Positions 7,987 to 63,998 of a stretch of 64,000 bases of DNA are shown here, in pieces; position 1 is the first letter of the stretch; each line of letters opens with the position of its first letter. The stretch covers positions 391,709 to 455,708 of IMG/VR virus record IMGVR_UViG_3300032770_000001. One strand, 5' to 3'. The translations under genes were made by a program, and so were the position numbers. Under the pieces are notes generated by a model. It worked only from the letters and a program-made list of their open reading frames with translations. It did no database searches and was not told where the DNA came from.

Positions 7987-7995
7987 GTATTATAT
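7987..7995 (+). promoter_or_regulatory. Putative middle-class promoter element GTATT-N3-T
   Basis: gtattatat upstream of 8019; the motif recurs before other non-structural genes. Confidence 0.4.
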
Positions 7996-19545: not shown

Positions 19546-19573
19546 AAGAAAAGGGAGGCGATGAACGCCTCCC
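19546..19573 (-). terminator. Rho-independent terminator (first of a tandem pair)
   Basis: gggaggcg-ttcat-cgcctccc followed by ttttctt. Confidence 0.8.
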
Positions 19574-19600
19574 CAGTTCCTCGTACACGTGGTACGTGAA

Positions 19601-20634: not shown

Positions 20635-23600
20635 TTAGGCGACTTTCAGCCCGTCGCCCTGAATACCTGCAACAATATCTTGAATATAGCGGTGCTCGAC
20701 AACCACAGAGTCGCCCCAGTATGTTACCCCGCTTTCAGGGTTAGGCTCGCCGCTGCTGTAGCTTGAGTCGAGGTTTTCGATGATCCAGTCCTCAGCCGCC
20801 GCCGTCATTGGGGTCAACAGGAAGATGCCGCCCTCGTTGCGAACTTCAAAATCCGGCCCCTCGTAGGGAGCACCTTGTGGGGTGTACTGCGGCTTATCCG
20901 CCTTTTTCTTACGACCACGTGCGCCGGGGTGACCGCTTGACTTCTTGCTGCTGGTCAGCGGAAGTGCCTGCTGATTCGGATCGGGAGCAGGTGCTTCCGG
21001 TTGCTCTTCCTCGTACAGGTTGCCGCCGTACTGCATGAAAACCTCGTGCCCCTGCTTGAGTTCCTCGACCATATCTTCGATCTGGTAACGCTCGTGCCAG
21101 TACAGATTGCCGTTCGGATCAGCGAAGATTTCACCGGAGGTCAGAGCCCCGATGTCGGCGGGATTGACATTCTCCCAGCCGTTGGTGAAGAAGTCTTCCA
21201 TGAGTTCCCAGATGCTCTGGTACGTCTGCGCATCTTGCGGTCCACCCTGAGCAACTTCCTGAAGCAACTGTGCAGTCGGCTTCAGTTTGATGCCGCCCTT
21301 ACCGTAGAGGACATCGACGTAGGTGCCTTTGTCTTCGCCCTTGGTCGGCGTGCGTGCTTCCTGCGCATCCACTTTGTTCTGCTCGTCCTGCTGTTTCAAC
21401 TCATCAAGCGTCACAGCCGTTTTCTTTGATGCGACAGCGGAGTTCGGAACGTAACCGACTTCCGGCTGTTTTGGCTTCAGACCGAGTTGGTCTGGAGTCT
21501 TCGGATTGCCACGCTGCTTCATGTTGAGAATTGCTGGATTTGCCGCTTCCTTGTCAGATGCGATCACTTCACCTTCCTCGTCATCATCATCGAACGGGAC
21601 GTAGCCATCATAATCGGAACGCTCCGGATAGAATGCTGCCCATTCCGCCAATGCTTCAGCGTTGCCGCGACCGGATTCCTTGAAGCGAGCGATCATCTCG
21701 TTCAGATACTCATAGCCATGCGTGGTCAGCGGGTTCTTTAGGAACTCACCGCAGCCTGCGCAGTTCTGCGGACTGTCGGACTCTTGATCGAAGAACGGAC
21801 CTTTCGGATAGTTGTCGGAGTCATAGCTTGACTCGTCTTCCGGGTTCTCCGGGCCTTCGCCGTTCGCGTCGATTCTCTGCGCGATTTTTATAGCGCAGTC
21901 TTCGCACCACACGTCAGCGGCGTAGATGTATTCACCGTCGTTAGAACCACGGATACCACTGTCGGCACCGGGCTCGAATGCTTCTTTTTCCATTGTGCCC
22001 TCTTTCACTTGCTCGTTCTTAAATGTCACGAAACGGTGACGCCCACCGTGCAGAGAAGTTCCGCAGCAATCGCAAGGACGTTTCGAAAACTCATCGATGC
22101 CTTCGCCCGTCTCGCTGTCGAAGTCAGGAACCAGCCAACCCAATCTCTGGATGCCTGCCTGAATCTGCTCCATGCGCTTGTTAGCCTCTTCGCCCTGATA
22201 GTAATAATCAAGGCCGGAGTAGTCATCGTTCACTGCCGCTTGCAGACAGTCGTCGCACAACCACAAATTGTCCTGCTCAATTTCAGCGGCAGTTTTGTTT
22301 GCCTGAATGCCCATGTCTTTCAACATCTGCTTCTCTTCGTCCGTGGGGTTGTATTCCTTCTCGTGCCCGTGGAACTCTTCGATACCCGCAGGCTCTTCCA
22401 ATTCTACGTCACCGGGGGTGATGTAGTCCGCGAGGCTCTGCAACTCAGCCAGTTCCGCATAGCTAATGCGCTCGGCACGAAGTTGGCTACGGAGATATTC
22501 CAGACGCTCCTGAATTTCCTCTGGCTCCAACTCGTCCTCGTCCTCATCAATCCATGCCTTCTTGCTCGATGCTTCCTTGGAGCAAGTGCCGCAGTACCAC
22601 TTGTTGCCGATCTCGTGGCTGCCTTCGTCTACGTCAGATGAATCGAACACCTTACCGCAGCCAGCACATTCAACTTCGCGTGAAGAGGTCTTGTCGCTGC
22701 TTTCGACCGCATCCAGTCCCTCATCCACATGACGATCCATGCAGGATTCGTCGCCAGACTCAATCTCTTCGAGGTCGAGACCTTCGATGCTTTGCCCACC
22801 CTCGGCATCGACCACCGACCAAATCGCACCACACGGTCCGCACGTAACCCACCACTGTCCGTGCTCGAACGCAGGCACGCAACCTTCGTGAATCTCAGTG
22901 AGAGGGTGAGACGCGATTAGACGCTCTACTTCCATCTCCATTTCCGGAGTGTTCTGCTCCGTTTTCAACGCTGCTTTCTTCATGGTGCCCTCTTCTGACG
23001 ACATGTGGAATTTCTTGTTGGGAAGCTCCGGTGGGACGGTCTTCCGCTTCAGCCCTTCGTTTTCTTTCTCCTGTGGCAGCACAGCCATCGGTGCCCCCGG
23101 CTGTCCGGGGATCGGCTGCACTACCGGATTTGGTTCCGCTGTGGGTGCTTGCGGTTGCGCTGCTGGTGCCTGAACCGGAGCCGGAGCCGCCGCCACAGTC
23201 ATGGAAACAACCTTCTCACCCGGCTTGAGCTTCTTGGTAACGGCTTTCTCCGCTCCCTGATAATCGTTGCCGCCTACGGTTTCTTCACGCTGATTGCCTT
23301 TGGTGTCACGCAGGGTGACCTTCCACTTGGCTTCCTTCAACATCTTGATACCGTGATTGCGATTGACACTGTGCTCATTCGCGGTGTCTTCAGTCGTGCC
23401 CCATACCGGACAATTGCGGCACTGCCACATCTTCTCCGGAACGGTGACGCCCTTGAGAGCGTCCGGGTTGCGAGCTAACAACTTGTCCAAACGTCCAGCC
23501 GTCTTGCTTGCACCCTTCATTTTCTTATAAGCTTCGAATTTCTGATCCTGCGGTACACCCGGCATGTGTTCTCCACCACCACGACAAGGGCGTAAATTGC

Positions 23601-25683
23601 AGGTTACACATTCCAGACAACGAGGGCAATACAGATGCGTGCGCTCTTGCTCATCATAGTCCGGTTCCTCAGGCATGTCGGCAGGCAAGAGGTTCTCCGC
23701 AAATTCTGCGGTCTTTGACGCTTGCTTGAGCTTCGAATAACGTTCCCGCATCTGTGCTAATGTCTTTTCGTCGAAACGGATGATGTCGGCATTGCGCTTC
23801 AGACCCTCTTCAGAGCCAAATCCGCCAGTCACCAACTTCTCCTCATCGTTCACGAAATGGTAGGAACCGTCGTTGAGCTTCTCAACTTTCCACTTGGGGT
23901 CATCGAGTTTGATGCCAACGGTCTTCGGCCCGGCGGGTTTCTTGCCGCCATGAATGTATTGCTCGTAATAAGCATCGTGCTCTTCAGCACTGATTTTGCC
24001 AGCATAGCGCAATGCGTCAATCACGCCAGCGATGTAGTTGTAGGCGTTTGAATTCTTTGCTGAGTCATCCCAGATTTTCGTCAGGAAGGTGCCGACATCC
24101 AAACCACGGAGGCTATCCTTCAACTCGGCGACTTTAACTGCTCCGGCATGATAACTGCCTTGCGTGCGTCCATGCGGTGGACGCCCGGTGTCGCCTTCAG
24201 TGATCTGTGGCTGAATGCCATCATAGAATTGATCGCCGCCCTCAGCGCCGTCTTTCTTCTTAGGTTCGGTCTTCTTCATCAACTCCACGGTTTTGTCGAA
24301 GTTTTCGCTGTAGACCGGGCAATCGATGCGGTGCCGTCCATGATAGCCGCCGCAGCACTTTGAAGTGTCAATCGTCGGAACCGAAGTATCGGCAGCTTCT
24401 TTGCAAATGCAATTTTCCTTCACCCGGTCACACGCATCACAGTACGGCACACCAGCAGGCGGGTGAATATCCCGCTCAGTCTGAACCGCAGCCGCTTTCG
24501 GATCATTGATGCCGGGGACGATACCGTGTTCCCAATTCTTGCCACAGTCATTGCACTTGGCAGTCTCGAAGTCGGTCGGCATGAGCCCGTAGTCTGAGGA
24601 GCCGCAGTGTGGGCACTTCGGTTTAGCCGATGCCGTGGCGTGTACTTTCGCCTGCGGTTCTTTCATCTGAGTGATGAGATTGATAAGTTGGTATCCAGTC
24701 TCTTCGCCACGAGGCAACTGTCCTTCGGTCGCAAACTCTTCAAGTAGACCGGGCAGTTCCGAGTAGTAACGCTTCAATGAGTCCTGACCGAGGTTGGTGA
24801 CTTTCAGCCAGTCCTGTACCAGATCGCTCACCGTAATCTTGGCTTCCCCAGTGCTCTCCTGTGCGTGCTTCCAGAACAGTAAGAGAACGATCATGTTGTA
24901 CTTGGCAGCCGTGCGGGATACCTTGGTTGGGAGCCATGCGGCGAATCGCTTCGCTACGTTCTTGAATTCCTGCTCGGATTCAAACTCAGTGTGCGGCGAT
25001 GGAGCATTCAACTGCTGACTGTCGATCAAACTATAAGTTTCGTCCTCCTCGTGCTTGCCGCCAGCAGGCTGCTCGCCGGAGACTTCCTCCGGATGCTGCA
25101 CCTGACGGATATAGCTCTTGGCACGCTCGATGCGGAAGGTAAACTGCTTCTTCAGGAATTCCGTAATCTGTTCGGCCACTGGGAGCTTCTTGACGCCAGC
25201 GGGAAAGTTCTTGATGGCTCGCGGAAAGTCCTGCATCGCCTTGCCGTGCTGGAGCACGTAAAGGATGACGTGATAGATCGCCTCATCCTTCAGTTCGAAG
25301 TCGAGGGTTGTGGATGTGAGTGAGGGAACGAAGACTGTCTGAAACCACTTCGACCAATCCATCTTGGGATCGACCGGATATCCCGCCTGCTCAATGTAGG
25401 ACTTGACGAACTTGTCGAAATCCTTGTTGTAGGCGAAGACGTAGCGGATTCGTGACGCAATACGCGCCTGACCCGGTGAGATCGGGTGGAAATTGGCTGG
25501 GGTCTGAACAGGCTTCCCGGTGTACGGGTCGGCCAACCTGAAGGCGTAGCCGTCCGGTCCGGCGACTTTAGACACCACCCGGTAGGCGGAACCATCGAGA
25601 GTATCGACAATTTGCCCCGGCGCGATAAGGCGGGAAAACTTGGTCAGGTTCGCCGCTGGTACTCGTACAGCGTCCTGAGGCAT
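20635..25683 (-). CDS. 1682-aa modular polyprotein: sigma-like N-terminal domain plus more than 15 K-x-A-delimited modules
   Basis: Linkers KAAA, KEAA, KVA, KQASKTA, KGASKTA, KEA, KKAA, KEASSKKA, KTAA, KKTA, KKKA separate Zn-finger and acidic modules. Confidence 0.9.
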   Translation of the reverse strand: MPQDAVRVPAANLTKFSRLIAPGQIVDTLDGSAYRVVSKVAGPDGYAFRLADPYTGKPVQTPANFHPISPGQARIASRIRYVFAYNKDFDKFVKSYIEQAGYPVDPKMDWSKWFQTVFVPSLTSTTLDFELKDEAIYHVILYVLQHGKAMQDFPRAIKNFPAGVKKLPVAEQITEFLKKQFTFRIERAKSYIRQVQHPEEVSGEQPAGGKHEEDETYSLIDSQQLNAPSPHTEFESEQEFKNVAKRFAAWLPTKVSRTAAKYNMIVLLLFWKHAQESTGEAKITVSDLVQDWLKVTNLGQDSLKRYYSELPGLLEEFATEGQLPRGEETGYQLINLITQMKEPQAKVHATASAKPKCPHCGSSDYGLMPTDFETAKCNDCGKNWEHGIVPGINDPKAAAVQTERDIHPPAGVPYCDACDRVKENCICKEAADTSVPTIDTSKCCGGYHGRHRIDCPVYSENFDKTVELMKKTEPKKKDGAEGGDQFYDGIQPQITEGDTGRPPHGRTQGSYHAGAVKVAELKDSLRGLDVGTFLTKIWDDSAKNSNAYNYIAGVIDALRYAGKISAEEHDAYYEQYIHGGKKPAGPKTVGIKLDDPKWKVEKLNDGSYHFVNDEEKLVTGGFGSEEGLKRNADIIRFDEKTLAQMRERYSKLKQASKTAEFAENLLPADMPEEPDYDEQERTHLYCPRCLECVTCNLRPCRGGGEHMPGVPQDQKFEAYKKMKGASKTAGRLDKLLARNPDALKGVTVPEKMWQCRNCPVWGTTEDTANEHSVNRNHGIKMLKEAKWKVTLRDTKGNQREETVGGNDYQGAEKAVTKKLKPGEKVVSMTVAAAPAPVQAPAAQPQAPTAEPNPVVQPIPGQPGAPMAVLPQEKENEGLKRKTVPPELPNKKFHMSSEEGTMKKAALKTEQNTPEMEMEVERLIASHPLTEIHEGCVPAFEHGQWWVTCGPCGAIWSVVDAEGGQSIEGLDLEEIESGDESCMDRHVDEGLDAVESSDKTSSREVECAGCGKVFDSSDVDEGSHEIGNKWYCGTCSKEASSKKAWIDEDEDELEPEEIQERLEYLRSQLRAERISYAELAELQSLADYITPGDVELEEPAGIEEFHGHEKEYNPTDEEKQMLKDMGIQANKTAAEIEQDNLWLCDDCLQAAVNDDYSGLDYYYQGEEANKRMEQIQAGIQRLGWLVPDFDSETGEGIDEFSKRPCDCCGTSLHGGRHRFVTFKNEQVKEGTMEKEAFEPGADSGIRGSNDGEYIYAADVWCEDCAIKIAQRIDANGEGPENPEDESSYDSDNYPKGPFFDQESDSPQNCAGCGEFLKNPLTTHGYEYLNEMIARFKESGRGNAEALAEWAAFYPERSDYDGYVPFDDDDEEGEVIASDKEAANPAILNMKQRGNPKTPDQLGLKPKQPEVGYVPNSAVASKKTAVTLDELKQQDEQNKVDAQEARTPTKGEDKGTYVDVLYGKGGIKLKPTAQLLQEVAQGGPQDAQTYQSIWELMEDFFTNGWENVNPADIGALTSGEIFADPNGNLYWHERYQIEDMVEELKQGHEVFMQYGGNLYEEEQPEAPAPDPNQQALPLTSSKKSSGHPGARGRKKKADKPQYTPQGAPYEGPDFEVRNEGGIFLLTPMTAAAEDWIIENLDSSYSSGEPNPESGVTYWGDSVVVEHRYIQDIVAGIQGDGLKVA

Positions 25684-25695
25684 GTTCTTCCGTCC

Positions 25696-25926
25696 TTAGT
25701 CGATGTGGATGTCGTTCGGGTCGCCTTCGGTCTTCTCGTCTTCCTTCATGATCTGCTCAAGGGTCTTGAGGTACTCTTCGTGATCCTCAAAAGCCTGCGG
25801 GTCATGCGGAGCGCCCTTTTCGTCCTTGATCGTGGACTGAGCTTTCTTCAGTCCAAGGCGGTCAAGCTCGCCTGCGTACAGGCGGTTCATTGCGGATGAC
25901 TCTGCTGCTGCGAATTTCTTTGCCAT
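25696..25926 (-). CDS. Small putative head protein
   Basis: 76 aa, AGGAG RBS; KKFAAA, KKAQ. Confidence 0.75.
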   Translation of the reverse strand: MAKKFAAAESSAMNRLYAGELDRLGLKKAQSTIKDEKGAPHDPQAFEDHEEYLKTLEQIMKEDEKTEGDPNDIHID

Positions 25927-27306: not shown

Positions 27307-30300
27307 TTAGATTCGGCGACCCCACTGGTAGTTGATCGAAACGTTGGTTCCAGTGATAGTCTGCACGCCGCCGTCCTGACCACCGTTCTGGAACTGTGTG
27401 AAGCCGAAGAACGGGTGCACTTTGTAGCAACCCAGCGAAGCCCCAGCCGGAGCGTTCGTCGGGTTCTGCACGGCGTACCAGTCCCACCAGCCATGAACCG
27501 CAGCACTCTCAAGGCTGCTGTACGGAGCCAGCAAGTTCGGACTCTGACTGTCTATGCTGATGTTCGCCACGTCGGTCGCGATACCAAGGCAGTTGGGATC
27601 GAACGAAGCTGCCGGAGCCGTGCCAACAGCGGCGAGGCTGTTACCCAGACGAGCCGCATCTATTGCTACCTGTGAGGCGTTGTAGTCAACCAGATAGAAC
27701 GGGCCGAACTCAGTGATTGTGTTGCTGGTCGCGGAATTGCGCCCATGCTGCACAGTCACACGAAGATTCGTGATACCAGTTTGACGGGCAAACGAGTACG
27801 CATAACCGTTATGGGCACGCCACAGCGGAGTGATTTGCGTGTAGCTAGTTCCGCCGTTGGTTGAAACTTCAAACTTCAAACCACGGCACAAATTGCGATT
27901 CTGCAAGAATTTGTAAGTTGAACCCTCAGCAGGGTTGACTTGCGAACCGTAGCTGTAAAACACCAGATCAACGAAGTTGCAGGTTGTCTGCAATACTGAA
28001 GTGCTGAGACGGAACGTGCTGACCGATGGCAAGCTGGAGTTCGTTGCCGTGATGTTCAAGCGGTAGTAACGGTACGAACCCGGTGTCGTCACATTATAGG
28101 CGTAGCCGCGTGACGCCGATACACCAGTGCGTGTATCCAGCGTAGTCCACGAGGAGTTATCATTCGAACCCTGCAACTGGAAATTCGTCGGCAGACCGCT
28201 GCTTGGGTTATCCGAAGTGTCATAAACGGTGCGGAAACCATAAGACAGAACTGTCTGAGCATTGCCGAGACCGAGATCGATTTCGAGCCATTGTGTCGGA
28301 GAGCCACTAGCCTGCCAGAACTCTTGCGGGTTATTCATGAAGGCTTTCCAGCTTGCGGTAGTCGTACCGCTTTGTGAACTGCTGGAAGCCGTGTAAGTGT
28401 TGGAGCCCACCGTCCATGAGTACGGGTTGCTGCCTGTGACGATGTTAACGTTCGCCGGAGCATAAGCATAGCTTCCGGTAGCGAATCCGTTCGGCGTCCA
28501 TACCAGAACCAGCGGTGAGGCGTCGAAGCCTACGTTAGAGCCGTCCAATTTGTTCCACGAAGCCGACGTTGTCCAGCCCTTATAAGCTGTAGTCAACGAC
28601 GCAGTGTTCGGCGTTGTGCTGGTCGGAGCAGTCCAAGTCGCACCACCCGGATCGGTGTCGATAAAGTACGGAGTGATGGCTTCTTCTTGAGCAATGGTGC
28701 GGCTATCAGTGTTGGTGAACGTCTGACCCGCGAATTGTGCCCACGAAGAGCGCAACTTACGAGCAAACTTGGTGTTGCCATAGCACATGTTCCACGTGTG
28801 GAACTCGCCGTTAGTCCATGAAGTCGAAGACAACGGGCCGAACTGTACAGCCAAACCATACGGCAGGTTGATCGTGCTGGTGTAGCCGCCAGCATACGCA
28901 CCCACAGTGTAGGGGTTGCTCGAAGCGTCGGAGAAACTGTCCGCCATTACCCAATTGCCGCCCGAATATTTCCAGTAAGTTGGCAGGAATGCCATGCCCT
29001 GCCCAGCCGCACGACCATAGGTCGCGTTTGAGGGCAAACCATCCTGTCCACCACCAGCGCAGCGCAAGAACACCATGTAATTGTCGGTCAACGAAACTGG
29101 GAACATCCACGCCCCACGGTCGAGGAACTGTCCGGAAACCGGAGTCAAATCCATCCAAGACCAATAATCTTGCTGAACGCTTTGAATCGATGGAGGATTG
29201 CTGCTGTAGCTGTTGCGTTGAATCAACGACAAGCTGGTCGGCGAACTCCAGTTAAACCCCGGAGGAGCCAAGTAAATTGGGCACGTAGCGTTGTTCGAGT
29301 GAATCGGCTGATGCGGGAAGAACGTGGTGCGGTCGGCGTTCGTCGCATAGTCACGTGCGTGCGTAATCGAGATCGGCTGCGTGGCCGGGTTGAACTGGCT
29401 CGGATTGAAGCTATCGTTCGCGAACAATGTGCTTGACGCGACAGCGGTCAACTGCGTATTGCTCAGCGAAGCCGTAGAGCCGGATACGTTGAGTGTAAAG
29501 ACCGATGCGCAATGCCAGCTACCCTGAACCAACAGGATGTTTGGAGCCACGTCATGCATGAATGCGTTGATGTCGTAGAACCAAAAATCTGGGTTCTGGC
29601 TTGGTGAAGTCGCATTGGCACCGAAGTTCGTACCGTACTGAATCGGTGAAGAACCGTTGATCTTGGACGTGTTCCATGTCGCAGCGACCGGATCGTATGC
29701 CTGCACTTGCCAGTTGACATTAGTGACTGCACCGAAAGCGTTCGATACAGTGTACGGGCCGCCGCCCGAAACGCTAACGTCCTCGCACAGAATGTAGAGC
29801 TTGCCATCGCGAGGGGAAATCATCTCGCTCAATGAACGACCGTTATGACGCCCGGTGTTTCCACTGAAGGTGATCGAACCCCATGCGCCCGTACCGATGA
29901 AGTAATTGACGACACCAATGCGAGCCGTAGCGACCAAGCCCGTCTGTGTAGTGCGCGGATCGGCTGTCATGGTGCCGTAAAGCGCCCACAGTTCGTAACA
30001 AGTCGCCGTACCTGTGTCGGAGGCGTTGGTGTAGTTGCCGACCGTTGTCGGGACTTGGAAGCTGCTTGTGGATAATCCGGTTGCCGACACCACATAGGTG
30101 ATGTTGTTAATTCCGGACTCCTGCGTGCCTGTGATGTTCACCACATCGCCAGCTTGGAAATTATTTGCTGCCGTCACAGTCAGAACGCCGCCAGTTGCGG
30201 AAGTCGCCGTGATCGGCCCGGTGATTGTGCGCGTCTTCAATGCGCCGTAAGCCTCGCCCACGTGCGCAACTGCTGGAGCATTGGTCGCGAAACTGAATGA

Positions 30301-31893
30301 ACCGGAGCCAGCCAGTTCGAGAACACCGTTGGTCTGCGTGAAATCGTAACGAGCCAGTTTGCCATCCTCAGAGAGGAAGAAGACCTGATATCCCAATACC
30401 TGCGTAGAGTTGCTGGTATAGTAAGTCGGCACAGTCGCAACACCTGCAATACGCATCGCGGTGGAGCCTGTCCACGTATCCGCAAGATCAAAGAACAAGA
30501 GCGGCACCATCGAAGACTTATTGCTCCAGATCGAGCATTTGGTGTCCATCACCAAGCCGTAATATTCTTCGTTGATGTTGAATGTCGCCGCCTGACGAAC
30601 GCGGAAGTCCGGGTTATAAACTGCAATACCACCCGAAGTTTCTCCCTGTGCGGAGTAAACACTGTGCACCGTGTTGATGGTGAATTGGGTGCTGGTTGCA
30701 GTAGCCACAGTCCAAAGCTGACCATTGAGCCACGTGTTGTTGCCGTTGGTCAAACCCTGAATGAAGACAATCTGGTTTGTCGAGAACGTATTTTTCGCAG
30801 TGACCGTAACTACGGTGCCGGATGAGGCCACAGAAGTGATTGCCGCACCCACATCACGCCCACCTGCCCAAACATATTCCTGTTGATCGTTGACGTAGGT
30901 ATACGGGTTCTGAATATTCTGACTTGAAACTACGACGCCCGTGCCGAGTGTCTGACCATCTTCCTCATACGGATAAGCGAATGAGTTGAAGCCGTTGTCA
31001 AATACTTTTGCCAAATGGAACGATAGACCACGACTGTTCAGCTTGCGCACACCTGTGATCTGGAACAGTTCGCGGTAGTTGTCGCTCGCGGCTGAGTTAA
31101 GACCGCCGCTCTGACGCAGAGGATCGCTAGTCGCCGGGTATGTCTGGCCTAAAGTATTTGGAGTTTCCGCACCCGACCACGCTGGCAACTGACCTGACAC
31201 GCTGTTGTTGTCATTAAATCCCGTCATGCGGAGCGAAGGGCGATTCTCCATGAAAAACTTCAGGCTGCCGGAGCCAGTTGACTGTGAGCCCGTGCTTGCA
31301 ATGTGGAAAATCATGTAGCTCGCAGGCATGTAGATCGAGCGTGTCAACGCCGAGGACATGTTAATGATCGAGTCTGTACCATCGGAGGGCGAAGAGTTCG
31401 AGTCTAGCCACTGATGAGCAATGTCCGCCGTCATCGGCCATGACGCTACACCATGCCCGTATACGGGTTCATAATCCGCAGATTCTCCATTTGGATCGTG
31501 GCTATAATCGGCATAGACAAGACCACCGACAAGACTCCCAATGTAGCCGTCACGAAAACCGCTCACAGCAGGCGGAACAGCGGTTCCCACGAATGCCATT
31601 GTGCGAACGAAATATCCACCGTTCGGACGCCATGCCTGACCACTGGACGTACCATCACCGGAGCCCGTTGTCTGCATGTAGCAATCGCTGCTCGGCGAGG
31701 CTGGGTTTGTTGAAGCCTGAGGATTGATGCTTCCCCATGTACTCAGAAGATGGAAGTAACGTGCGGTCTGTCCGTTTACGTTGTCCGGAATGATACCGAA
31801 TTCTGAAGCGAATGCACTGGCATTGCGTGTGACCGGAGAAGTAGCAAGAAACTGCCAGTTTAGATCGGCGATTTGATATGGGTGAATTGCCAT
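27307..31893 (-). CDS. Large tail fibre / receptor-binding protein with a discoidin (F5/8 type C)-like domain
   Basis: 1528 aa, S/T/G/N-rich; ASSSSQ...WKAF...QWLEIDLG...PTNFQLQGSNDNSSWTTLD...YRYYRLNIT. Confidence 0.85.
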   Translation of the reverse strand: MAIHPYQIADLNWQFLATSPVTRNASAFASEFGIIPDNVNGQTARYFHLLSTWGSINPQASTNPASPSSDCYMQTTGSGDGTSSGQAWRPNGGYFVRTMAFVGTAVPPAVSGFRDGYIGSLVGGLVYADYSHDPNGESADYEPVYGHGVASWPMTADIAHQWLDSNSSPSDGTDSIINMSSALTRSIYMPASYMIFHIASTGSQSTGSGSLKFFMENRPSLRMTGFNDNNSVSGQLPAWSGAETPNTLGQTYPATSDPLRQSGGLNSAASDNYRELFQITGVRKLNSRGLSFHLAKVFDNGFNSFAYPYEEDGQTLGTGVVVSSQNIQNPYTYVNDQQEYVWAGGRDVGAAITSVASSGTVVTVTAKNTFSTNQIVFIQGLTNGNNTWLNGQLWTVATATSTQFTINTVHSVYSAQGETSGGIAVYNPDFRVRQAATFNINEEYYGLVMDTKCSIWSNKSSMVPLLFFDLADTWTGSTAMRIAGVATVPTYYTSNSTQVLGYQVFFLSEDGKLARYDFTQTNGVLELAGSGSFSFATNAPAVAHVGEAYGALKTRTITGPITATSATGGVLTVTAANNFQAGDVVNITGTQESGINNITYVVSATGLSTSSFQVPTTVGNYTNASDTGTATCYELWALYGTMTADPRTTQTGLVATARIGVVNYFIGTGAWGSITFSGNTGRHNGRSLSEMISPRDGKLYILCEDVSVSGGGPYTVSNAFGAVTNVNWQVQAYDPVAATWNTSKINGSSPIQYGTNFGANATSPSQNPDFWFYDINAFMHDVAPNILLVQGSWHCASVFTLNVSGSTASLSNTQLTAVASSTLFANDSFNPSQFNPATQPISITHARDYATNADRTTFFPHQPIHSNNATCPIYLAPPGFNWSSPTSLSLIQRNSYSSNPPSIQSVQQDYWSWMDLTPVSGQFLDRGAWMFPVSLTDNYMVFLRCAGGGQDGLPSNATYGRAAGQGMAFLPTYWKYSGGNWVMADSFSDASSNPYTVGAYAGGYTSTINLPYGLAVQFGPLSSTSWTNGEFHTWNMCYGNTKFARKLRSSWAQFAGQTFTNTDSRTIAQEEAITPYFIDTDPGGATWTAPTSTTPNTASLTTAYKGWTTSASWNKLDGSNVGFDASPLVLVWTPNGFATGSYAYAPANVNIVTGSNPYSWTVGSNTYTASSSSQSGTTTASWKAFMNNPQEFWQASGSPTQWLEIDLGLGNAQTVLSYGFRTVYDTSDNPSSGLPTNFQLQGSNDNSSWTTLDTRTGVSASRGYAYNVTTPGSYRYYRLNITATNSSLPSVSTFRLSTSVLQTTCNFVDLVFYSYGSQVNPAEGSTYKFLQNRNLCRGLKFEVSTNGGTSYTQITPLWRAHNGYAYSFARQTGITNLRVTVQHGRNSATSNTITEFGPFYLVDYNASQVAIDAARLGNSLAAVGTAPAASFDPNCLGIATDVANISIDSQSPNLLAPYSSLESAAVHGWWDWYAVQNPTNAPAGASLGCYKVHPFFGFTQFQNGGQDGGVQTITGTNVSINYQWGRRI

Positions 31894-32504
31894 TATGCTA
31901 CCCCAACGATGGACAGGAAGTAGGAGACCTGAAGAATGTCAGGTGTTCCCGAACCGCCGTTACGTCCATGAATTAAAATCGATGACGGCAGAACCACGAG
32001 GGTCTGCGGAATAAAAATTGTCGGCTGTTGGTTAACCGCACCGAACTGTGCGTCCGGAATGTCTCCACCTGCGGACGATGACTGCCAACCTGTCAGACCG
32101 AGAGCTTTCAACTGAAAATCCAGCGGCAACTTTGTCCACTCGAAGAACAATTTGTGGCGTCCACCGACCGGAGTCAACGGTGCCGTGTAGGTCTGACGGG
32201 TCTGCCATTGCGGGTCGGCCCCAGTATCTACCGAGTTGTTTGCGGTTGCACAATACGGGGCATACGGATTGGTGCGATCAAATGTGAAGCCTGTCCAGTT
32301 CGTATAGCCTATAGGATCATCGGGAAGCAGGAAGCACCACGGCGCTCCACCGCCCTGCATCTGAGTGATGAAGATGTGCCCGTAAGCGCAGAGAACGTCA
32401 TCCGAGATGGCGTTATCCTTAGACCACTCGGCGACCGTCTCACCTGTCTTGCCGGAGATGACCTTAAGCTGGACTTCGTTTTCGAATTTCAATCCTTGAT
32501 ACAT
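31893..32504 (-). CDS. Putative tail/baseplate protein
   Basis: 203 aa, translationally coupled within the structural operon. Confidence 0.7.
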   Translation of the reverse strand: MYQGLKFENEVQLKVISGKTGETVAEWSKDNAISDDVLCAYGHIFITQMQGGGAPWCFLLPDDPIGYTNWTGFTFDRTNPYAPYCATANNSVDTGADPQWQTRQTYTAPLTPVGGRHKLFFEWTKLPLDFQLKALGLTGWQSSSAGGDIPDAQFGAVNQQPTIFIPQTLVVLPSSILIHGRNGGSGTPDILQVSYFLSIVGVA

Positions 32505-33539: not shown

Positions 33540-33865
33540 TAGGTGTCCTCACCCGGCTCGATACCCGGCGTCAAGTCATACAACGGCGGATTGACGAGAG
33601 CAGTAAATGGCGGTTGTGGCATGTGATGCACCACTTGAATCACACCCTGAAGATTGAACGATTGCTGCATGAAAATCAGATAGCGATTGTTCACTGAGTC
33701 GAATGACCACGACTGCACAACCTGTAAAGAACCATCGACGTAAATTTCCAGATCGCGCTGCGGATTGAAAACACCCAGCGGACCGTCCTGCACGAACGGG
33801 CCGATGTACGGTGCCAGCGTGATCTGAAGTCGATTTGGATACGGGCCGTTGGTGATCGCCTGCAT
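33539..33865 (-). CDS. Putative structural protein
   Basis: 108 aa, TAATG overlaps on both sides. Confidence 0.7.
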   Translation of the reverse strand: MQAITNGPYPNRLQITLAPYIGPFVQDGPLGVFNPQRDLEIYVDGSLQVVQSWSFDSVNNRYLIFMQQSFNLQGVIQVVHHMPQPPFTALVNPPLYDLTPGIEPGEDT

Positions 33866-38154: not shown

Positions 38155-38196
38155 TATTACTTAATACGCTGGCCGCTAGTGACTTCTTACAAATTT

Positions 38197-38895: not shown

Positions 38896-39855
38896 TTAGT
38901 TCTCGCCGTAGTTGGCGGTCGAGTTGAAGCGACCATTGACCGTAAGACGCTGCACGCCGGACGGGTTGAACACGAGGAAGCCGAGGTTCTCGAAGATCGA
39001 GAAGCCGATCTGACGGAGGTCAGGACGGTCGGCGCTCATGACCGTGAGCGGAATACGCTCTGGGATAACGCCGAGGAACTCTGCGTCCGCCAGAATGTAG
39101 ATCGAGCCGTAGCCGACCTTACGCGACTGGAGGAGCGTTGCGCCCCAGAGATAGCCCATCACGCCCGTTTTCAACAGCTTGCGCTGTGTTTCGCGGTCGA
39201 TGTTCTGTTGGGTCCACTTCAACAGGTCCGTGTAGTCACGGGGGTTGAAGAAGACGAACGCGACTGAGAGGTCATGACGCTGCACCTGACCAAAGCCGTC
39301 TGCCATCGAGTTGATGTCAATCGGAGCGTTGATCGGAATGTCAGGGTTGTAGACCGGATCATTCGAGTTCTTACCCGCTGCGCTGTTCGCGACACCGTCA
39401 AACAGAACGAACACGTATCCGTCTTCGGCTGCGCCCACTTCGGCTTTCGCCAAGTTCAGTGAACGAGCAACCAAGTCGAAACGGCGCTCTTTGATCTGCG
39501 TGATCGGGATCATCGGATTGGACACGATTTCGAACGTCGGAACCGTGACGCGCTTCGGTTTTGTAACGCGGACGATGTCACCACCTTCTTCGCCGACGAT
39601 GAATGCTTCGACGAAGGACGAACCCGGAGTCGAGCCAACGGTCATCGCGTTGACATCGAATTCCTTGTCGTAGATGGGCAGTGCGCCATCCGGAAGAGTT
39701 TCGACCATGAGAGCCTTGCGAGCAATGCTCATATAGTCACGGCGACGACGCAGGGACGGACCGAGCGAAGCCGCAAGCTTCTGACGCCCACCCGCCGTCT
39801 TCAAAAGTTGGCCGAGCATTTGCGTCTGCTGTTGTGTGCGAGAAAGTTGTGCCAT
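38896..39855 (-). CDS. Major capsid protein (HK97 fold)
   Basis: 319 aa; gene order protease-scaffold-decoration-MCP-terminator; DYMSIARKALMVETLPDGALPIYDKE, VPTFEIVSNP, GFSIFENLGFLVFNP; GAGGAG RBS. Confidence 0.9.
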   Translation of the reverse strand: MAQLSRTQQQTQMLGQLLKTAGGRQKLAASLGPSLRRRRDYMSIARKALMVETLPDGALPIYDKEFDVNAMTVGSTPGSSFVEAFIVGEEGGDIVRVTKPKRVTVPTFEIVSNPMIPITQIKERRFDLVARSLNLAKAEVGAAEDGYVFVLFDGVANSAAGKNSNDPVYNPDIPINAPIDINSMADGFGQVQRHDLSVAFVFFNPRDYTDLLKWTQQNIDRETQRKLLKTGVMGYLWGATLLQSRKVGYGSIYILADAEFLGVIPERIPLTVMSADRPDLRQIGFSIFENLGFLVFNPSGVQRLTVNGRFNSTANYGEN

Positions 39856-41752: not shown

Positions 41753-44008
41753 TTAGAACTCTTCGCTGCCGAACAGCGCGGTTGCAATGTCCACAGGCTT
41801 CGGCGAAGCGACGACCGGGCGAACACGCTTAATGCTGCCCTTCTTCTCGTCCTTCTTCTCTGATGCCGCCTTTGCTGACTGTTTCGGAGCCTGCAATTCC
41901 GGACGTGCATCTTGAGGAGTGCGCTTTGCGCCCTGCTCTTCAGGCTTGATGTCCTTCATTGCTTCCGCGAACAAGTCCTCATCGTGATCGGTGTCGTTGT
42001 CGCGTGCTTCCGAACCGTCCTGCTTGAAGTGGTTCGCCGCGTCAACAAACGCCTCGACCACGTCTTCGCCTTCAACGCTGGTTGCCGTTTTGTTGTCAAC
42101 CGACGCCATCAGGCTGGCAAGCGGATCATTTTCCGAGCCCTGAACTGTGAAGTAGTCCTCGATTGAAGCGACTTGCATACCGCTGTCTTCGAGTGCTGCT
42201 TCCATCTGTGCCGCCGAGGTCGGTGCGAAAAAGTCTTCCGCAGCCATGTGCTCGACGCTACCGTCGCCTTCGTTTGCAAGAGCCGAAACTTTATCGTCCA
42301 TTGCACCCTCATCAAATACGGACGAAAGGTCAAGCTCGCCCTCTGCCGGGCCTTCAGTCTCTTCGAGCGAAATTTCTTCCTCGCCTTCCAACGGAAGAGC
42401 AGGCTCTTCCTCGGACTCTTCGAGAATTTCCTGTTCGAGTGCCTTGATCGCTTCCTCGGCTTCCTCGATCTTTTCCTGCACGACCATCTTCTTCTCGTCG
42501 GTCAGGATTGCACCAGCGGCTTCCTCAGGCGGTGCGCCTGCATCGCCAGCCGGAGCTTCTGCCAACGGATCGCCCGGTGCTTCAGGAGCAGGCGGTGCGT
42601 CTGGAGCCGGAGCATCGACCGGAGCTTCCGCTGCCGGATCGTCTGCGACTTTCTGATCTGCGCCCTTTACTGGAGGAGCAGGGAGATCGGCCTTCTTTTC
42701 GGCAGCAGCTTTCTTCTCTGCGGCAGCCTTGCACTCAGGGCAATCACCAGCACACTTGCCGTCCTTGCCATGAGCAGTCTTCGCGGCAGCCTTCTTGCTG
42801 TCGCCTTCGGAGAGGTTCACGGTCTGACCCGGCTTCTCACCAGCGTCCGGACGCTCGGCGGCTTTACCCGCTTCGAGTTCCTTCGGCTCAGTGTGCTCAC
42901 CGCCGCCGCAACCGCGACCATCGTTGTACGTGCCTGTCTGTGGACCTGCATCCTTGCGGTCGTCGGCAGTCTTCGCGGCTGCTTCTTTCGCAGAACCATG
43001 AAGTTCCTTTTCGACGGCGGCACGCTCAGACTTGAGCACGGACGGGTCTTCAAGATACTGATTGAGTTCGGTCTTGTGGACTTCTTTGAACTGTTCAGCA
43101 AGGTGGGTGGAGTGAGCGTTCTTTGCGGTCTGACGGAGGGCGGCGACGAGAGTCTTCGTGTCATTGCCATCCAGCAGCGATGTCGCGAATGCTTGACGAC
43201 GCTCGACGGAGGCTGTCGGCAACATCGTGTTAGCGATGGTATACGCCGCAGCCGTGCGAATCTGTGCTTCTTTCTTGATAGACTCGCGCTGTTTCTTTGC
43301 CTCAGCGAGCTTCTCTTTCAGATTCGCGGGCTTGGTAGCAGTCTGATTTGCCATGGTAGAGCCTTCCTTTTTCATGTCAGAACGGGCAGAAACGCCCTTC
43401 TTTAGAGGTACTTGATAGTTATTTTTCTTGCTAATTGGAGCTTTTGCACTAGCAAGGGGTGCTTCCAGAGGGGCTGCTTCCGCAGCCGCATCATCTGTGG
43501 GAAGTGGTTCTGCCGCCCCAGCCGCGCCGTCAACCGGGGGCTCAGGGGTAGCTGCCGGAACAGCAGCTTCAGGGGCAGGAGGGGGTTCCGGTGCCGGGGG
43601 TGCTGCCGGAGCGGAAATGCCAAGATCGGGTGCCGGGGGTGCCAGCGGTGCTGCCGGAGCAGCCAAGGGATCGATAGCGGGTTCACCGCCAGATGCGTCG
43701 GCGATCTGCGAATCCAGACCATCCAAAACGGACTTGATCTCTTCCGACCACGGTCCGCCCTTGAACTTTTCCCACTCACCAATCAATTGCACGCCTTCGC
43801 GCATGTGACGAATTTCTTCTTCGAGTTCTTCGCGCTTCTGGGAGAGGAGGTCGAATTCCGGCGATGGGCCGAGATCAGTGGGTGCGTCGGGAGCCATCTC
43901 AGGCATACCCATAAGCTGGTCGTCCATGCCGTCCAGCAGGGCTTGTTTACGAGCGATTTCCGCCGCTACGTGTGATTTGATCTGTGCAACTGTCTTCGGT
44001 TTTGCCAT
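41753..44008 (-). CDS. Prohead scaffold/core protein
   Basis: 751 aa, acidic, Pro/Ala-rich, coiled coils; many K-x-A motifs (KEAAAKTA, KKAAAKTA, KKAAAEKKA, KVA, KTAT); lies between protease and MCP. Confidence 0.8.
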   Translation of the reverse strand: MAKPKTVAQIKSHVAAEIARKQALLDGMDDQLMGMPEMAPDAPTDLGPSPEFDLLSQKREELEEEIRHMREGVQLIGEWEKFKGGPWSEEIKSVLDGLDSQIADASGGEPAIDPLAAPAAPLAPPAPDLGISAPAAPPAPEPPPAPEAAVPAATPEPPVDGAAGAAEPLPTDDAAAEAAPLEAPLASAKAPISKKNNYQVPLKKGVSARSDMKKEGSTMANQTATKPANLKEKLAEAKKQRESIKKEAQIRTAAAYTIANTMLPTASVERRQAFATSLLDGNDTKTLVAALRQTAKNAHSTHLAEQFKEVHKTELNQYLEDPSVLKSERAAVEKELHGSAKEAAAKTADDRKDAGPQTGTYNDGRGCGGGEHTEPKELEAGKAAERPDAGEKPGQTVNLSEGDSKKAAAKTAHGKDGKCAGDCPECKAAAEKKAAAEKKADLPAPPVKGADQKVADDPAAEAPVDAPAPDAPPAPEAPGDPLAEAPAGDAGAPPEEAAGAILTDEKKMVVQEKIEEAEEAIKALEQEILEESEEEPALPLEGEEEISLEETEGPAEGELDLSSVFDEGAMDDKVSALANEGDGSVEHMAAEDFFAPTSAAQMEAALEDSGMQVASIEDYFTVQGSENDPLASLMASVDNKTATSVEGEDVVEAFVDAANHFKQDGSEARDNDTDHDEDLFAEAMKDIKPEEQGAKRTPQDARPELQAPKQSAKAASEKKDEKKGSIKRVRPVVASPKPVDIATALFGSEEF

Positions 44009-44904
44009 TAGCGTATTAGCCTCCCGCGTAAATCGGCGTTGAGTAAAGCTTCCCCCAAATCAAGGGTCTCGAAATCATTATTTTTACTGGCAATTTTTGT
44101 AAGCTTTGCGATCTTGCCAGCCCCAGCCGCTTTGGTGTATGGAGATTTGGGACCGATCCATACCTCGCCGCCCTCGATAATGTTGCGTTTCGAGGCTCCG
44201 GGGAACGCTGGGGTCGCAACCCAAGAAGCTTCCACGAACTTCACACCGCCGTTCGGCAACGTCTTGTGACCGCAGAGTTCAGCGATGCGACGGGCGATGC
44301 CGTCTTCGTCCGGAAGGAAAGTGCCCTTCTGGTACGACAGATGATTGCAATAGGTGCTTTGATCGGTGACATGGGTGCCGCAATAAGAGCAGATCACCAG
44401 ATCGGTGACGCAACCCATCGACAGATAGCGAACTTCCTCGTTCTTGATGTCCTCAATCAGTTTCTCGTGTCCGAGATCGGTAGCGACGAGGATATCGACG
44501 AAGTACACCCAAACTTCGTTGCCGACAACGTGCACCTTACGAAGCTGGGAATCCAGAATGTGCCCTTTGGCGTACTTGCTGTTCTGGTAGTGCTCAACGA
44601 AGTTGAAGGCACCAGTGAAACTCTTGTGCGAAAGCTTTATGACCTCGTTCGTCCATGCGTCATCGTTGTTGTTGACAAGATGCGCAGTCTCCGGCTTGAT
44701 GAGGTAGTCGTAAGGATCGTGCTCAGTCATCACGCTCGCCATGATGGTGCAATGCGAAAGCATGTACCGGGAATTGTCGGCGGCGATTTTGATTTCCGAC
44801 GCTTGCTTGTGACCGAAGGCACGATTGCCATACATCAACTGCCAGTCGTTGGCAGAGACAATGGGGTCTTCGATAAGCGCGTTGGCAAACTTCTTGAAAG
44901 GCAT
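44008..44904 (-). CDS. Prohead maturation protease (assemblin/HK97-type Ser protease with Zn-finger insert)
   Basis: NNNDD, FVEH (His), LSMGC (Ser), CSYCG...CNHL, FVEASWVATPAFPGA. Confidence 0.85.
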   Translation of the reverse strand: MPFKKFANALIEDPIVSANDWQLMYGNRAFGHKQASEIKIAADNSRYMLSHCTIMASVMTEHDPYDYLIKPETAHLVNNNDDAWTNEVIKLSHKSFTGAFNFVEHYQNSKYAKGHILDSQLRKVHVVGNEVWVYFVDILVATDLGHEKLIEDIKNEEVRYLSMGCVTDLVICSYCGTHVTDQSTYCNHLSYQKGTFLPDEDGIARRIAELCGHKTLPNGGVKFVEASWVATPAFPGASKRNIIEGGEVWIGPKSPYTKAAGAGKIAKLTKIASKNNDFETLDLGEALLNADLRGRLIR

Positions 44905-63960: not shown

Positions 63961-63998
63961 GCTTATTCAATACCAACTTTCGAGTATTAAATATTGTG
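63961..63998. promoter_or_regulatory. Divergent pair of GTATT-N3-T elements
   Basis: Minus strand gtattgaat-aagc-ATG (63960); plus strand gtattaaat-att-GTG at the window edge. Confidence 0.5.

What the first reader, a model, noticed from the sequence alone, without database searches (positions are those of the whole stretch)
24700..25430. Sigma-factor-like domain as the first cargo module of the giant polyprotein
Seen: after a leader ending RIASRIRYVFA comes a helical domain of about 250 aa. In order it has a region-2-like stretch (KDEAIYHVILYVL...ITEFLKKQFTFRIERAKSYIR), an acidic region-3.2-like finger (EEVSGEQPAGGKHEEDETYSLIDS), SPHTEFESEQ and a C-terminal HTH-like segment (ITVSDLVQDW...LGQDSLKRYYSEL). 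Inference: a divergent sigma-70-family factor made late, packaged, released by cleavage and injected to redirect host RNA polymerase. It could read the GTATT-N3-T promoters.
Basis: inference. Interest (0 to 1): 0.78.

Follow-up and report, generated by a model that had tools for sequence, protein, structure and literature searches.

The report
Sigma-like core of a giant phage protein
The flagged stretch is the conserved core of an undescribed family of late phage proteins, predicted to fold like a bacterial sigma factor in two helical domains joined by an acidic linker; every match is weak, so a virion-delivered sigma-like factor stays an attractive but unproven idea.

Summary
Window 24700-25430 (minus strand) encodes residues 85-328 of a 1682-aa protein of a 455.7-kb myophage related to Tunturiibacter phage Tunturi_5, and every quoted peptide is present.

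- **A real module.** 128 cluster representatives share residues about 10-345, and some proteins of 277-301 aa consist of little else. The C-terminal tail, rich in zinc ribbons and acidic residues, varies freely.
- **Predicted fold.** AlphaFold2 (pLDDT 83.6; domain A alone 95.2) gives:
  - an SH3-like barrel
  - helical domain A (88-196)
  - a disordered, strongly acidic linker
  - helical helix-turn-helix (HTH) domain B (230-320)
- **Sequence tests for sigma are negative.** Pfam, PDB and hhalign show nothing, and hhalign scores equal a reversed-profile control.
- **Fold and language-model searches point to sigma, weakly.** They are collinear: A matches sigma domain 2 and B matches sigma domain 4. 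Z never exceeds 5.6 and unrelated helical folds score the same.
- **Packaging is plausible.** A KTA motif shared with the capsid-protein propeptide, the scaffold-like protein and a classical polyvalent protein suggests prohead packaging and proteolysis.
No cleavage site frames the module, and the "leader" is a folded domain.

Verdict: partly supported. The sigma-like architecture is probable; sigma function and injection are inferred.

The parts
20635..25683 (-). Gene for the 1682-aa late protein: N-terminal conserved module plus a variable tail rich in zinc ribbons and acidic residues
   Evidence: ORF and translation. Shine-Dalgarno-like GGACGGA before the ATG. Single copy in the 455.7-kb genome.
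25486..25638 (-).
25432..25476 (-). Residues 70-84: conserved helix (ends ...RIRYVFA) that opens the core module
   Evidence: AF2 helix 70-84. A84 is conserved in at least 90% of members. Present in the short relatives that lack the barrel.
25096..25431 (-). Residues 85-196: helical domain A, resembling sigma domain 2 (regions 1.2-2.4) with an inserted helix pair at 149-165
24997..25095 (-). Residues 197-229: disordered, strongly acidic linker with a conserved short motif (consensus ..SM.QP....NiLDteEh)
   Evidence: pLDDT below 50 for 199-218. Mean net charge -8.8 across the family, against -4.7 for ECF sigma linkers. Consensus.
24718..24996 (-). Residues 230-322: helical domain B with a helix-turn-helix (285-296 / 300-320), resembling sigma domain 4
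24628..24717 (-). Residues 323-352: two terminal helices that close the conserved module
   Evidence: AF2 helices 332-339 and 342-352. Homology ends at about residue 345.
23707..23715 (-). First KTA motif (residues 657-659); further ones at window 23497-23505, 22288-22296 and 21415-21423. Candidate prohead-protease sites at module borders
   Evidence: 4 KTA observed against 0.53 expected (6 of 2000 shuffles reach 4). The same motif occurs in the major capsid protein (MCP) propeptide, the scaffold-like protein and the polyvalent protein.
25696..25926 (-). Conserved 76-aa acidic gene immediately upstream, a partner found in front of every family member examined
   Evidence: Homologous 66-78-aa genes precede the family member in L007, L013, L014, L015 and Tunturi_5 (gp344). 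No PHROG hit.
44008..44904 (-). Prohead maturation protease, the presumed enzyme acting on the KTA sites
   Evidence: phrog_18299 head maturation protease, E 2.1e-15.
38896..39855 (-). Major capsid protein, with LLKTA at residues 17-21 just before the point where homology to other capsid proteins begins
   Evidence: phrog_2522, E 6.8e-42. Alignments to other capsid proteins start at residues 21-23. K(T/S)A is conserved in Tunturi_5 and L013.

Best explanation
Residues about 70-352 are the invariant core of an unannotated phage protein family. The core consists of a sigma-2-like helical domain, a strongly acidic disordered linker and a sigma-4-like HTH domain. In this protein it is preceded by an SH3-like barrel and followed by about 1300 residues of zinc ribbons and acidic modules.

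The gene sits in the late structural gene array. The protein carries the same KTA motif as the capsid-protein propeptide, the scaffold-like protein and a classical polyvalent protein. I therefore infer three steps:
1. It is loaded into the prohead.
2. [quoted passage not shown] 3. It leaves the capsid with the DNA.

The most likely job of the core is to dock on host RNA polymerase core, or on promoter DNA, at the very start of infection, in the manner of a minimal two-domain ECF-type sigma factor.

Shown: the family, the predicted fold, the layout, the motif enrichment and the gene context. Inferred: homology to sigma, packaging, cleavage, injection and RNAP binding.
For: **Family and core**
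- 128 homologues; some stand-alone proteins of 277-301 aa contain only the core.
- One such protein comes from a phage whose capsid protein is 69% identical to this one.

**Fold**
- AF2 pLDDT 83.6 (whole module) and 95.2 (domain A alone).

**Sigma likeness**
- VIA-align wide search, whole model: 10-11 sigma factors in the top 50, aligned collinearly (residues 91-203 to sigma-2, 232-321 to sigma-4).
- Domain A alone: 14 sigma-2 domains in the top 50. E. coli sigma-70 residues 377-446 align at rmsd 2.7 A.
- About 30 of the 50 best chains in the second look are sigma chains.
- An AlphaFold DB cluster named 'Sigma-70 family' matches at E 0.049, probability 0.77, over query residues 93-352.
- ESM Atlas neighbours: about 68 of 100 (residues 83-330) and 86 of 100 (residues 85-200) carry sigma Pfam families.
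- The top hhalign local hits always fall on the collinear sigma region.
- The linker is acidic, as in ECF sigma factors.

**Need for such a factor**
- No Pfam-detectable RNAP beta or beta-prime is encoded, while a real ECF sigma is, so this phage uses host RNAP with its own sigma factors.

**Packaging**
- KTA is enriched: 4 against 0.53 expected here, and 8 against 0.57 in a neighbouring 1478-aa ORF.
- KTA is absent from the fibre and the DNA polymerase; the sheath has a single chance-level copy.
- It lies at domain borders of the ART/GNAT/NUDIX polyvalent protein.
- It lies at the capsid-protein propeptide border.
- It lies near the N-termini of several family members.
- The relative gp345 of Tunturi_5 is annotated as a virion structural protein.
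Against: - No sequence-level link to sigma exists. Pfam finds nothing in 67 members scanned. The same library scores the phage's own ECF sigma at 72.5 bits (region 2) and 36.5 bits (region 4).
- PDB sequence searches are empty.
- hhalign gives probability 0.2-0.6% and scores of 11.5-15.2, against 11.1-14.1 for reversed profiles.
- Foldseek never reaches E 0.01. It lists no sigma factor for domain A alone.
- DnaD, AAA-lid/ORC, designed repeat proteins and Fur-type winged helices score the same or higher.
- ESM Atlas scores are below 0.9, with few shared features.
- Domain A has net charge -0.3 against +4.5 for ECF sigma-2. The HTH has +0.2 against +2.0.
- The recognition helix has no conserved basic residues.
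- There is no virion proteomics for any family member.
- The 'virion structural protein' label in Tunturi_5 is a computed annotation, as far as the paper shows.
Confidence: 0.4

Rival explanations
1. The sigma resemblance is only the generic look of a small helical bundle followed by an HTH. The conserved module would then be a capsid-internal organiser: a scaffold- or portal-binding or DNA-binding anchor. It would load the variable tail into the prohead, or hold the genome end, in the way of targeting or pilot proteins of other phages. It would have no action on RNA polymerase.
For: - The architecture is a conserved N-terminus with a hypervariable C-terminus.
- The gene always lies in the structural array.
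- All sequence tests for sigma are negative.
- The electrostatics are acidic to neutral, unlike sigma.
Against: - Two independent methods, fold search and language-model features, both pick sigma domain 2 for domain A alone.
- The two-domain alignment is collinear and includes an acidic linker.
- Stand-alone proteins of 277-301 aa consist of the core with no cargo to load.
Confidence: 0.33
2. The full first-reader model. The roughly 250-aa domain is a true, divergent sigma-70 family member. It is excised from the polyprotein as a separate factor, injected, and reads the GTATT-N3-T sites.
For: - The fold and language-model leads are the same as for the best explanation.
- GTATTNNNT is mildly over-represented in the window: 22 against 12.4 +/- 3.3 expected.
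Against: - No KTA-type site lies at either border of the domain in this protein. The first is at residue 657. In relatives the first site lies 17 to 680 residues after the core.
- The residues before 85 are folded and conserved, so they are not a leader.
- Family membership fails every sequence test.
- Nothing links the domain to that DNA motif.
Confidence: 0.1
3. The protein is not packaged. It would be a late-expressed regulator acting inside the infected cell. It could be an alternative sigma-like factor for the latest genes, or a decoy that sequesters host RNAP or host sigma. The small upstream acidic protein would be its partner or antagonist.
For: - It has a sigma-like layout.
- It is always paired with a conserved gene of 66-78 aa, which recalls sigma/anti-sigma gene pairs.
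- Stand-alone forms have the size of a sigma factor.
Against: - It sits inside the structural gene array, with no nearby regulatory genes.
- The tail shares KTA motifs with head proteins.
- A tail of 1300 residues would be odd for a soluble regulator.
Confidence: 0.1
4. It is a tail or baseplate accessory fibre. The conserved N-terminus would anchor it to the baseplate and the variable C-terminus would contact the host.
For: - In this phage, in L007 and in Tunturi_5 it follows the fibre gene (1520-1528 aa in this phage and L007; gp341/gp342, 1294 and 1187 aa, in Tunturi_5), and in this phage and L007 also a Big_3_5 domain protein.
- A conserved N-terminus with a variable C-terminus is typical of fibres.
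Against: - In L013-L015 it lies near the capsid gene, without the fibre genes in between.
- The tail is acidic, helical or disordered and rich in zinc ribbons, not beta-rich.
- Fibre proteins of this phage and of Tunturi_5 carry no KTA.
Confidence: 0.05

Closest known systems
ECF (group 4) sigma-70 family factors, for example SigW, AlgU, BldN, CnrH and sigma-E
   Same: - Two helical domains joined by an acidic flexible linker, in the same order.
- Domain A superposes on whole sigma-2 domains (SigW residues 4-91, AlgU 9-93).
- Domain B superposes on sigma-4 (SigD4 at rmsd 2.5 A).
- The core is about 260 residues.
   Different: - There is no Pfam or profile similarity.
- Domain A has an inserted helix pair at 149-165.
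- Both domains are much less basic.
- The protein has an added SH3-like barrel and a tail of 1300 residues.
- It is encoded among late structural genes.
- The phage's genuine ECF sigma lies elsewhere and is recognised easily.
Sigma-like subunits without sequence similarity: phiKZ non-virion RNAP gp68 and AR9 gp226
   Same: Both are phage initiation factors. gp68 was recognised as sigma-like only by structure. AR9 gp226 shows no sequence similarity to sigma yet is essential for initiation (review PMC13282480).
   Different: Those proteins serve phage-encoded multisubunit RNAPs, and no such polymerase is detectable in this genome.
Polyvalent and ejection proteins packed in phage heads: polyvalent proteins of Iyer et al. 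2017, T4 Alt and internal proteins, P1 Dar, the phiKZ/SPN3US ejection proteins
   Same: - A giant multi-module late protein in a phage that also encodes a textbook polyvalent protein (ART-PolyVal, GNAT, NUDIX, ParB_N).
- A short motif is shared at module borders and at the capsid-protein propeptide, as with the protease motifs of T4 and phiKZ (those motifs are from my own knowledge; SPN3US papers are listed).
   Different: - No enzymatic domain is detectable in this protein.
- The motif here is KTA, not LxE or (S/A/G)xE.
- Packaging and cleavage have not been shown experimentally.
Tunturiibacter phage Tunturi_5 gp345 (XOB77788.1, 'virion structural protein')
   Same: It is a true family member: the profile matches it at E 1.2e-52 across profile positions 6-339 of 343. 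It has the same upstream small gene (gp344) and a similar neighbourhood.
   Different: It is only 668 aa, has a different tail, and has a single KTA. It comes from a cultured phage and host, so it is the practical object for experiments.

Membership tests
Sigma-70 family (Pfam Sigma70_r2 / r4 / r4_2) | A significant match to the region 2 and region 4 profile HMMs | tested here: not met
   No hit in the giant protein or in 67 family members. The best was one member at E 0.092. Positive control: the phage's own ECF sigma scores 72.5 and 36.5 bits.
Sigma-70 family | Profile-profile similarity to alignments of sigma factors | tested here: not met
   hhalign of A1 or its sub-domains against 52 ECF sigma factors and against RpoD/RpoS/RpoH/FliA gave probability 0.2-0.6% and scores 11.5-15.2. 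Reversed-profile controls scored 11.1-14.1. The top local hits were collinear (regions 2.1-2.2, 4.1-4.2) but not significant.
Sigma-70 family | Sigma-2 fold: helices 1.2, 2.1 and 2.2 plus the long 2.3-2.4 helix | tested here: inconclusive
Sigma-70 family | Sigma-4 helix-turn-helix domain after a flexible acidic linker, C-terminal to sigma-2 | tested here: inconclusive
Sigma-70 family | Binds RNAP core (beta-prime clamp helices, beta flap) and confers promoter-specific initiation | not testable with these tools
   This needs binding and transcription assays or complex modelling. The structure tool handles single chains only.
Head-packaged proteins processed by the prohead protease | A phage-encoded prohead protease, plus a recurrent short motif shared with the capsid-protein propeptide and scaffold | tested here: met
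   The protease is phrog_18299. KTA occurs 4 times here against 0.53 expected. It also occurs in the capsid-protein propeptide, the scaffold-like 751-aa protein, the 1478-aa ORF and the polyvalent protein. It is absent from the fibre and the DNA polymerase, and the sheath has one chance-level copy. That the motif is a cleavage site is itself an inference.
Head-packaged proteins processed by the prohead protease | Presence of the protein or its fragments in purified virions | not testable with these tools
   No proteomic data are available for this phage. The Tunturi paper reports predicted functions only.
Polyvalent proteins (Iyer et al. 2017) | Several enzymatic conflict domains (ART, GNAT, methylase, helicase, peptidase and others) in one giant polypeptide | tested here: not met
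   There is no Pfam domain in the 1682-aa protein. Relatives show only zinc-finger models. The genome's 3659-aa ORF does meet the definition.

The most novel reading that the evidence does not exclude
A family of phages of soil bacteria packs a sigma-like initiation factor into the capsid, fused to a modular tail rich in zinc ribbons. The factor is delivered with the DNA, so that host core RNA polymerase is redirected to phage early promoters before any phage gene is expressed. This would be a third route to immediate-early transcription. The known routes are virion RNA polymerases (N4, phiKZ, crAss-like phages) and reliance on the host sigma factor.
Probability: 0.22. Interest if true: 0.85.

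Novelty: new variant of a known kind. Interest (0 to 1): 0.6.

Why it matters
Huge phages that lack their own RNA polymerase are assumed to start infection with the host's own sigma factor. A sigma-like factor delivered in the virion would change that picture. It would also explain how such phages can use promoters unlike those of the host from the first minute.

Even if the sigma reading fails, three results stand:
- A widespread, unannotated family has been defined, with 128 clusters at 50% identity and no Pfam or PHROG model.
- The family has a confidently predicted fold and a constant small partner gene.
- KTA is a candidate maturation-cleavage motif for this clade of phages, which would help annotate their head-internal proteins.

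A cultured relative, Tunturi_5 on Tunturiibacter, makes all of this testable.

Tried and rejected
**Searches that found nothing for the module**
- Pfam and PHROG scans of the protein, of 57 aligned members and of 20 further relatives.
- PDB sequence searches with the protein and with the profile; only chance hits (peregrin, fructose bisphosphatase).
- A profile search of the 5.8-billion-protein collection for intermediates carrying sigma Pfam domains; none found.

**Weak hits judged spurious**
- A weak Sigma70_r2 hit elsewhere in the genome lies inside a family A DNA polymerase.
- A weak Sigma70_r4 hit at window 40992-41054 was not pursued.

**Fold searches**
- Foldseek against PDB, BFVD, AlphaFold DB Swiss-Prot and clusters, and the ESM Atlas shape search gave no significant match.
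- The RapA/Mfd Tudor-like matches to the N-terminal barrel have low TM-scores and were not taken further.

**Relatives and context**
- Phage G and the uncultured 485-kb phage LR745208 lack the family, so published phage G virion data cannot help.
- I first read L013-L015 as small phages with a head-to-tail gene order. This is rejected: the L013 capsid protein is 69% identical to this one, and its 460-aa protein shows no similarity to the sheath here. These loci are fragments of related phages.

**Other**
- Tape-measure protein: rejected because of the zinc ribbons, the acidity and the length range of 277-1936 aa.
Full report
**1. What is at the coordinates**

The window is the last 64 kb of a 455,708-bp phage record. 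Its structural genes mark it as a myophage: the major capsid protein (MCP; phrog_2522), a head maturation protease (phrog_18299) and a tail sheath (phrog_2839).

The capsid protein is 70% identical to that of the jumbo Tunturiibacter phage Tunturi_5 and 34% identical to that of Bacillus phage G.

The finding lies in a 1682-aa ORF on the minus strand, window 20635..25683. A Shine-Dalgarno-like GGACGGA precedes its ATG.

**2. The stretch is the core of a protein family, not one cargo among many**

A full HMMER scan of 1.84 billion representatives found 128 relatives, 44 of them at E <= 1e-30.
- In nearly all of them the match covers residues about 10-345 at the N-terminus of proteins of 100-1936 aa.
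- The remainder is variable: acidic (about 17% Asp+Glu), rich in CxxC zinc ribbons, and without enzymatic Pfam domains.
- A subset starts at about residue 80 and lacks the first 70 residues. This subset includes a complete 277-aa gene and a 301-aa gene.
- The 301-aa form comes from a phage whose capsid protein is 69% identical to this one. Close relatives therefore differ between a bare core and a 1682-aa giant.

The protein is single-copy in this genome. Among isolates I found it only in Tunturi_5 (gp345, E 1.2e-52), not in phage G.

A conserved acidic gene of 66-78 aa always lies immediately upstream. Here it is window 25696..25926.

**3. Predicted structure**

AlphaFold2 with a 57-sequence alignment gave mean pLDDT 83.6 and pTM 0.65. 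The model has these parts:
- a small beta-barrel (strands 25-51)
- a helix at 70-84
- helical domain A (88-196)
- a disordered segment (199-218, pLDDT below 50)
- helical domain B (230-320), with a helix-turn-helix at 285-296 / 300-320
- two closing helices

Domain A modelled alone gave pLDDT 95.2 and pTM 0.86.

The barrel resembles eIF5A/EF-P domain I at a weak level.

**4. Sequence tests for sigma: negative**

- Pfam finds no sigma model in the protein or in 67 relatives. The same library scores the phage's genuine 209-aa ECF sigma at 72.5 and 36.5 bits.
- PDB sequence searches are empty.
- hhalign was run against 52 ECF sigma factors and against RpoD/RpoS/RpoH/FliA. It gives probabilities of 0.2-0.6% and scores of 11.5-15.2. 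Reversed-profile controls give 11.1-14.1.
- The best local hit fell on the collinear sigma region in the three strongest comparisons: residues 124-142 on regions 2.1-2.2, 288-304 on region 4.2, and 246-311 on regions 4.1-4.2. Two sub-domain runs against the small RpoD/RpoS/RpoH/FliA alignment did not. This is a hint, not evidence.
- A profile search for bridging sequences found none.

**5. Fold and language-model tests: concordant but weak**

Foldseek found nothing significant in PDB, BFVD or AlphaFold DB. Sigma factors and TFIIB recur among the weak hits. The best named one is an AlphaFold DB cluster 'Sigma-70 family' at E 0.049, probability 0.77, covering residues 93-352.

- **Second look at Foldseek's best chains.** About 30 of the top 50 are sigma chains.
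- **Domain A alone.** 14 of the top 50 are sigma-2 domains: sigma-B 5.2, BldN 5.1, AlgU 5.1, SigW 5.1, and sigma-70 residues 377-446 at rmsd 2.7 A. These alignments put helix 110-122 on region 2.1, helix 129-146 on region 2.2 and helix 169-196 on regions 2.3-2.4.

Against this:
- Z never exceeds 5.6.
- DnaD (5.6), Fur (6.4), AAA lids, ORC and designed repeat proteins score the same.

The ESM Atlas feature search, which is independent of the structure search, points the same way.
- About 68 of the 100 nearest named clusters for residues 83-330 carry sigma Pfam families.
- 86 of 100 for domain A alone carry Sigma70_r2.
- Scores are 0.85-0.89 with few shared features, which the tool classes as a lead only.

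Electrostatics fit only in part:

| Segment | This family | ECF sigma factors |
|---|---|---|
| Linker | -8.8 | -4.7 |
| Domain A / sigma-2 | -0.3 | +4.5 |
| HTH | +0.2 | +2.0 |

My reading is that a sigma-like two-domain architecture is more likely than not, at roughly 0.6. Membership of the sigma-70 family is unproven.

**6. Is it packaged and cut out?**

KTA, usually preceded by small or acidic residues, occurs 4 times in this protein against 0.53 expected (6 of 2000 shuffles reach 4). It occurs 8 times in a neighbouring 1478-aa ORF against 0.57 expected (0 of 2000).

It also occurs in the following places:
- three times in the scaffold-like 751-aa protein next to the protease
- at residues 19-21 of the capsid protein, just before homology to other capsid proteins begins; K(T/S)A is kept there in Tunturi_5 and L013
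- directly after Pfam domains of a 3659-aa polyvalent protein carrying ART-PolyVal, GNAT, ADP-ribosyltransferase, ParB_N and NUDIX domains

The fibre and the DNA polymerase have none, and the sheath has a single chance-level copy. In Tunturi_5 the DarB-like protein gp350 and gp348 carry KTA, while the fibres do not. Family members often carry K(T/S)A within their first 20 residues and at module borders.

I infer that KTA marks prohead-protease sites and that this protein is a head-internal protein.

The module is not framed by such sites, however. The first strict KTA here is at residue 657. In relatives the first site lies 17 to 680 residues after the core. A free 250-aa factor is therefore not supported for this phage.

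**7. Context for a transcription role**

No Pfam-detectable RNAP beta or beta-prime is encoded, though highly divergent phage RNAPs could escape these models. A genuine ECF sigma is encoded, so the phage uses host RNAP with phage sigma factors.

In the papers I searched I found no report of a sigma factor delivered in a virion. Sigma-like factors recognisable only by structure do exist, for example phiKZ gp68.

GTATTNNNT is mildly enriched in the window, at 22 against 12.4 +/- 3.3. Nothing connects it to this protein.

**8. Verdict**

The best explanation (confidence 0.4) is a head-packaged, protease-processed late protein. Its conserved core has a sigma-like architecture and probably engages host RNAP or promoter DNA on entry.

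The main rival (0.33) is that the resemblance is generic and the module is a capsid-internal anchor or DNA binder.

The finding is a new variant of known kinds: sigma-like factors and head-packaged multi-module proteins. It is worth testing in the culturable Tunturi_5 system.

**9. Limits**

- Model coordinates and residue-level structural alignments were not available to me. Conserved residues could not be mapped onto surfaces or onto the sigma residues that contact RNAP.
- No complex modelling was possible.
- The fold-search enrichments were not calibrated with control domains.
- All statements about packaging rest on motif statistics and gene context.

Noticed in passing
outside the window: G000:C1:342438-353417 (locus L008), minus strand: A 3659-aa ORF is a textbook polyvalent protein with ART-PolyVal, several GNATs, ADPrib_exo_Tox, ParB_N and NUDIX domains. 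Its four KTA motifs lie directly after Pfam domains (residues 2025, 2971, 2975, 3330).
   Followed up: partly
window 1-2105 (the ORF continues upstream to G000:C1:393813; locus L009), minus strand: A 1478-aa ORF with no Pfam hit carries 8 KTA motifs against 0.57 expected, mostly as (A/G)SE-KTA or EK(A/S)-KTA. It is probably another processed head-internal protein.
   Followed up: partly
window 25696-25926, minus strand: A conserved 76-aa acidic gene lies directly upstream of the giant gene. Homologues of 66-78 aa precede every family member examined (Tunturi_5 gp344, L007, L013-L015). It has no PHROG hit and its function is unknown; it could be a partner, chaperone or antagonist.
   Followed up: partly
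window 38896-39855, minus strand (residues 17-21): The capsid protein has LLKTA just before the point where similarity to phage G and mycobacteriophage capsid proteins starts. Tunturi_5 has LLKSA and L013 has ILKTA at the same place, so a propeptide of about 20 aa is likely.
   Followed up: partly
window 41753-44008, minus strand: A 751-aa low-complexity, Ala/Pro/Glu-rich protein lies next to the protease gene (the capsid gene follows about 2 kb further on) and carries three AAA-KTA / DN-KTA motifs. It looks like a scaffold or inner-body protein.
   Followed up: no
outside the window: G000:C1:88354-88983, plus strand (L003:1393-2022): A genuine 209-aa ECF-type sigma factor (Sigma70_r2 72.5 bits, r4 36.5 bits). 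Its nearest named cellular relative in the search is from a Terriglobales bacterium (MAG), consistent with an acidobacterial host.
   Followed up: partly
window 27307-34833, minus strand: A conserved block of genes of 322, 108, 344, 203 and 1528 aa is syntenic with L007. The last has an F5/8 type C domain and is followed by genes of 206 and 223 aa (the 223-aa one with a Big_3_5 domain). By gene sizes it looks like a P2/Mu-type baseplate plus fibre. The baseplate identity is my inference.
   Followed up: no
window 19552-19574, minus strand: A strong terminator-like hairpin (9-bp stem with 7 G-C pairs, then a T run) lies after the 254-aa ORF downstream of the giant gene. It probably ends this late transcription unit.
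   Followed up: no
whole window, for example 38159-38167, 35700-35708 and 63965-63973 (minus strand); 7987-7995 (plus strand): GTATTNNNT occurs 22 times against 12.4 +/- 3.3 expected. Several copies lie 5-30 nt upstream of ORF starts. No link to any factor was tested.
   Followed up: partly
tails of family members (for example giant residues about 845-860; Tunturi_5 gp345 residues about 560-585): Short linear motifs recur in the otherwise variable tails: PELPN in 28 of 71 long members, ENLDLV...KTA...RIAARR, DTGR, and KTAKLV.G..LTPEM. This suggests shuffled mini-modules.
   Followed up: no
outside the window: G000:C1:141874-146346, plus strand: A 1490-aa ORF encodes a family A DNA polymerase with long extensions. 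It is the source of a spurious weak Sigma70_r2 hit.
   Followed up: no
window 21628-21930 (giant residues 1252-1352), minus strand: One internal module of the giant protein is 45% identical to a hypothetical protein of Erythrobacter phage XM05. Tail modules therefore circulate between unrelated phages.
   Followed up: no
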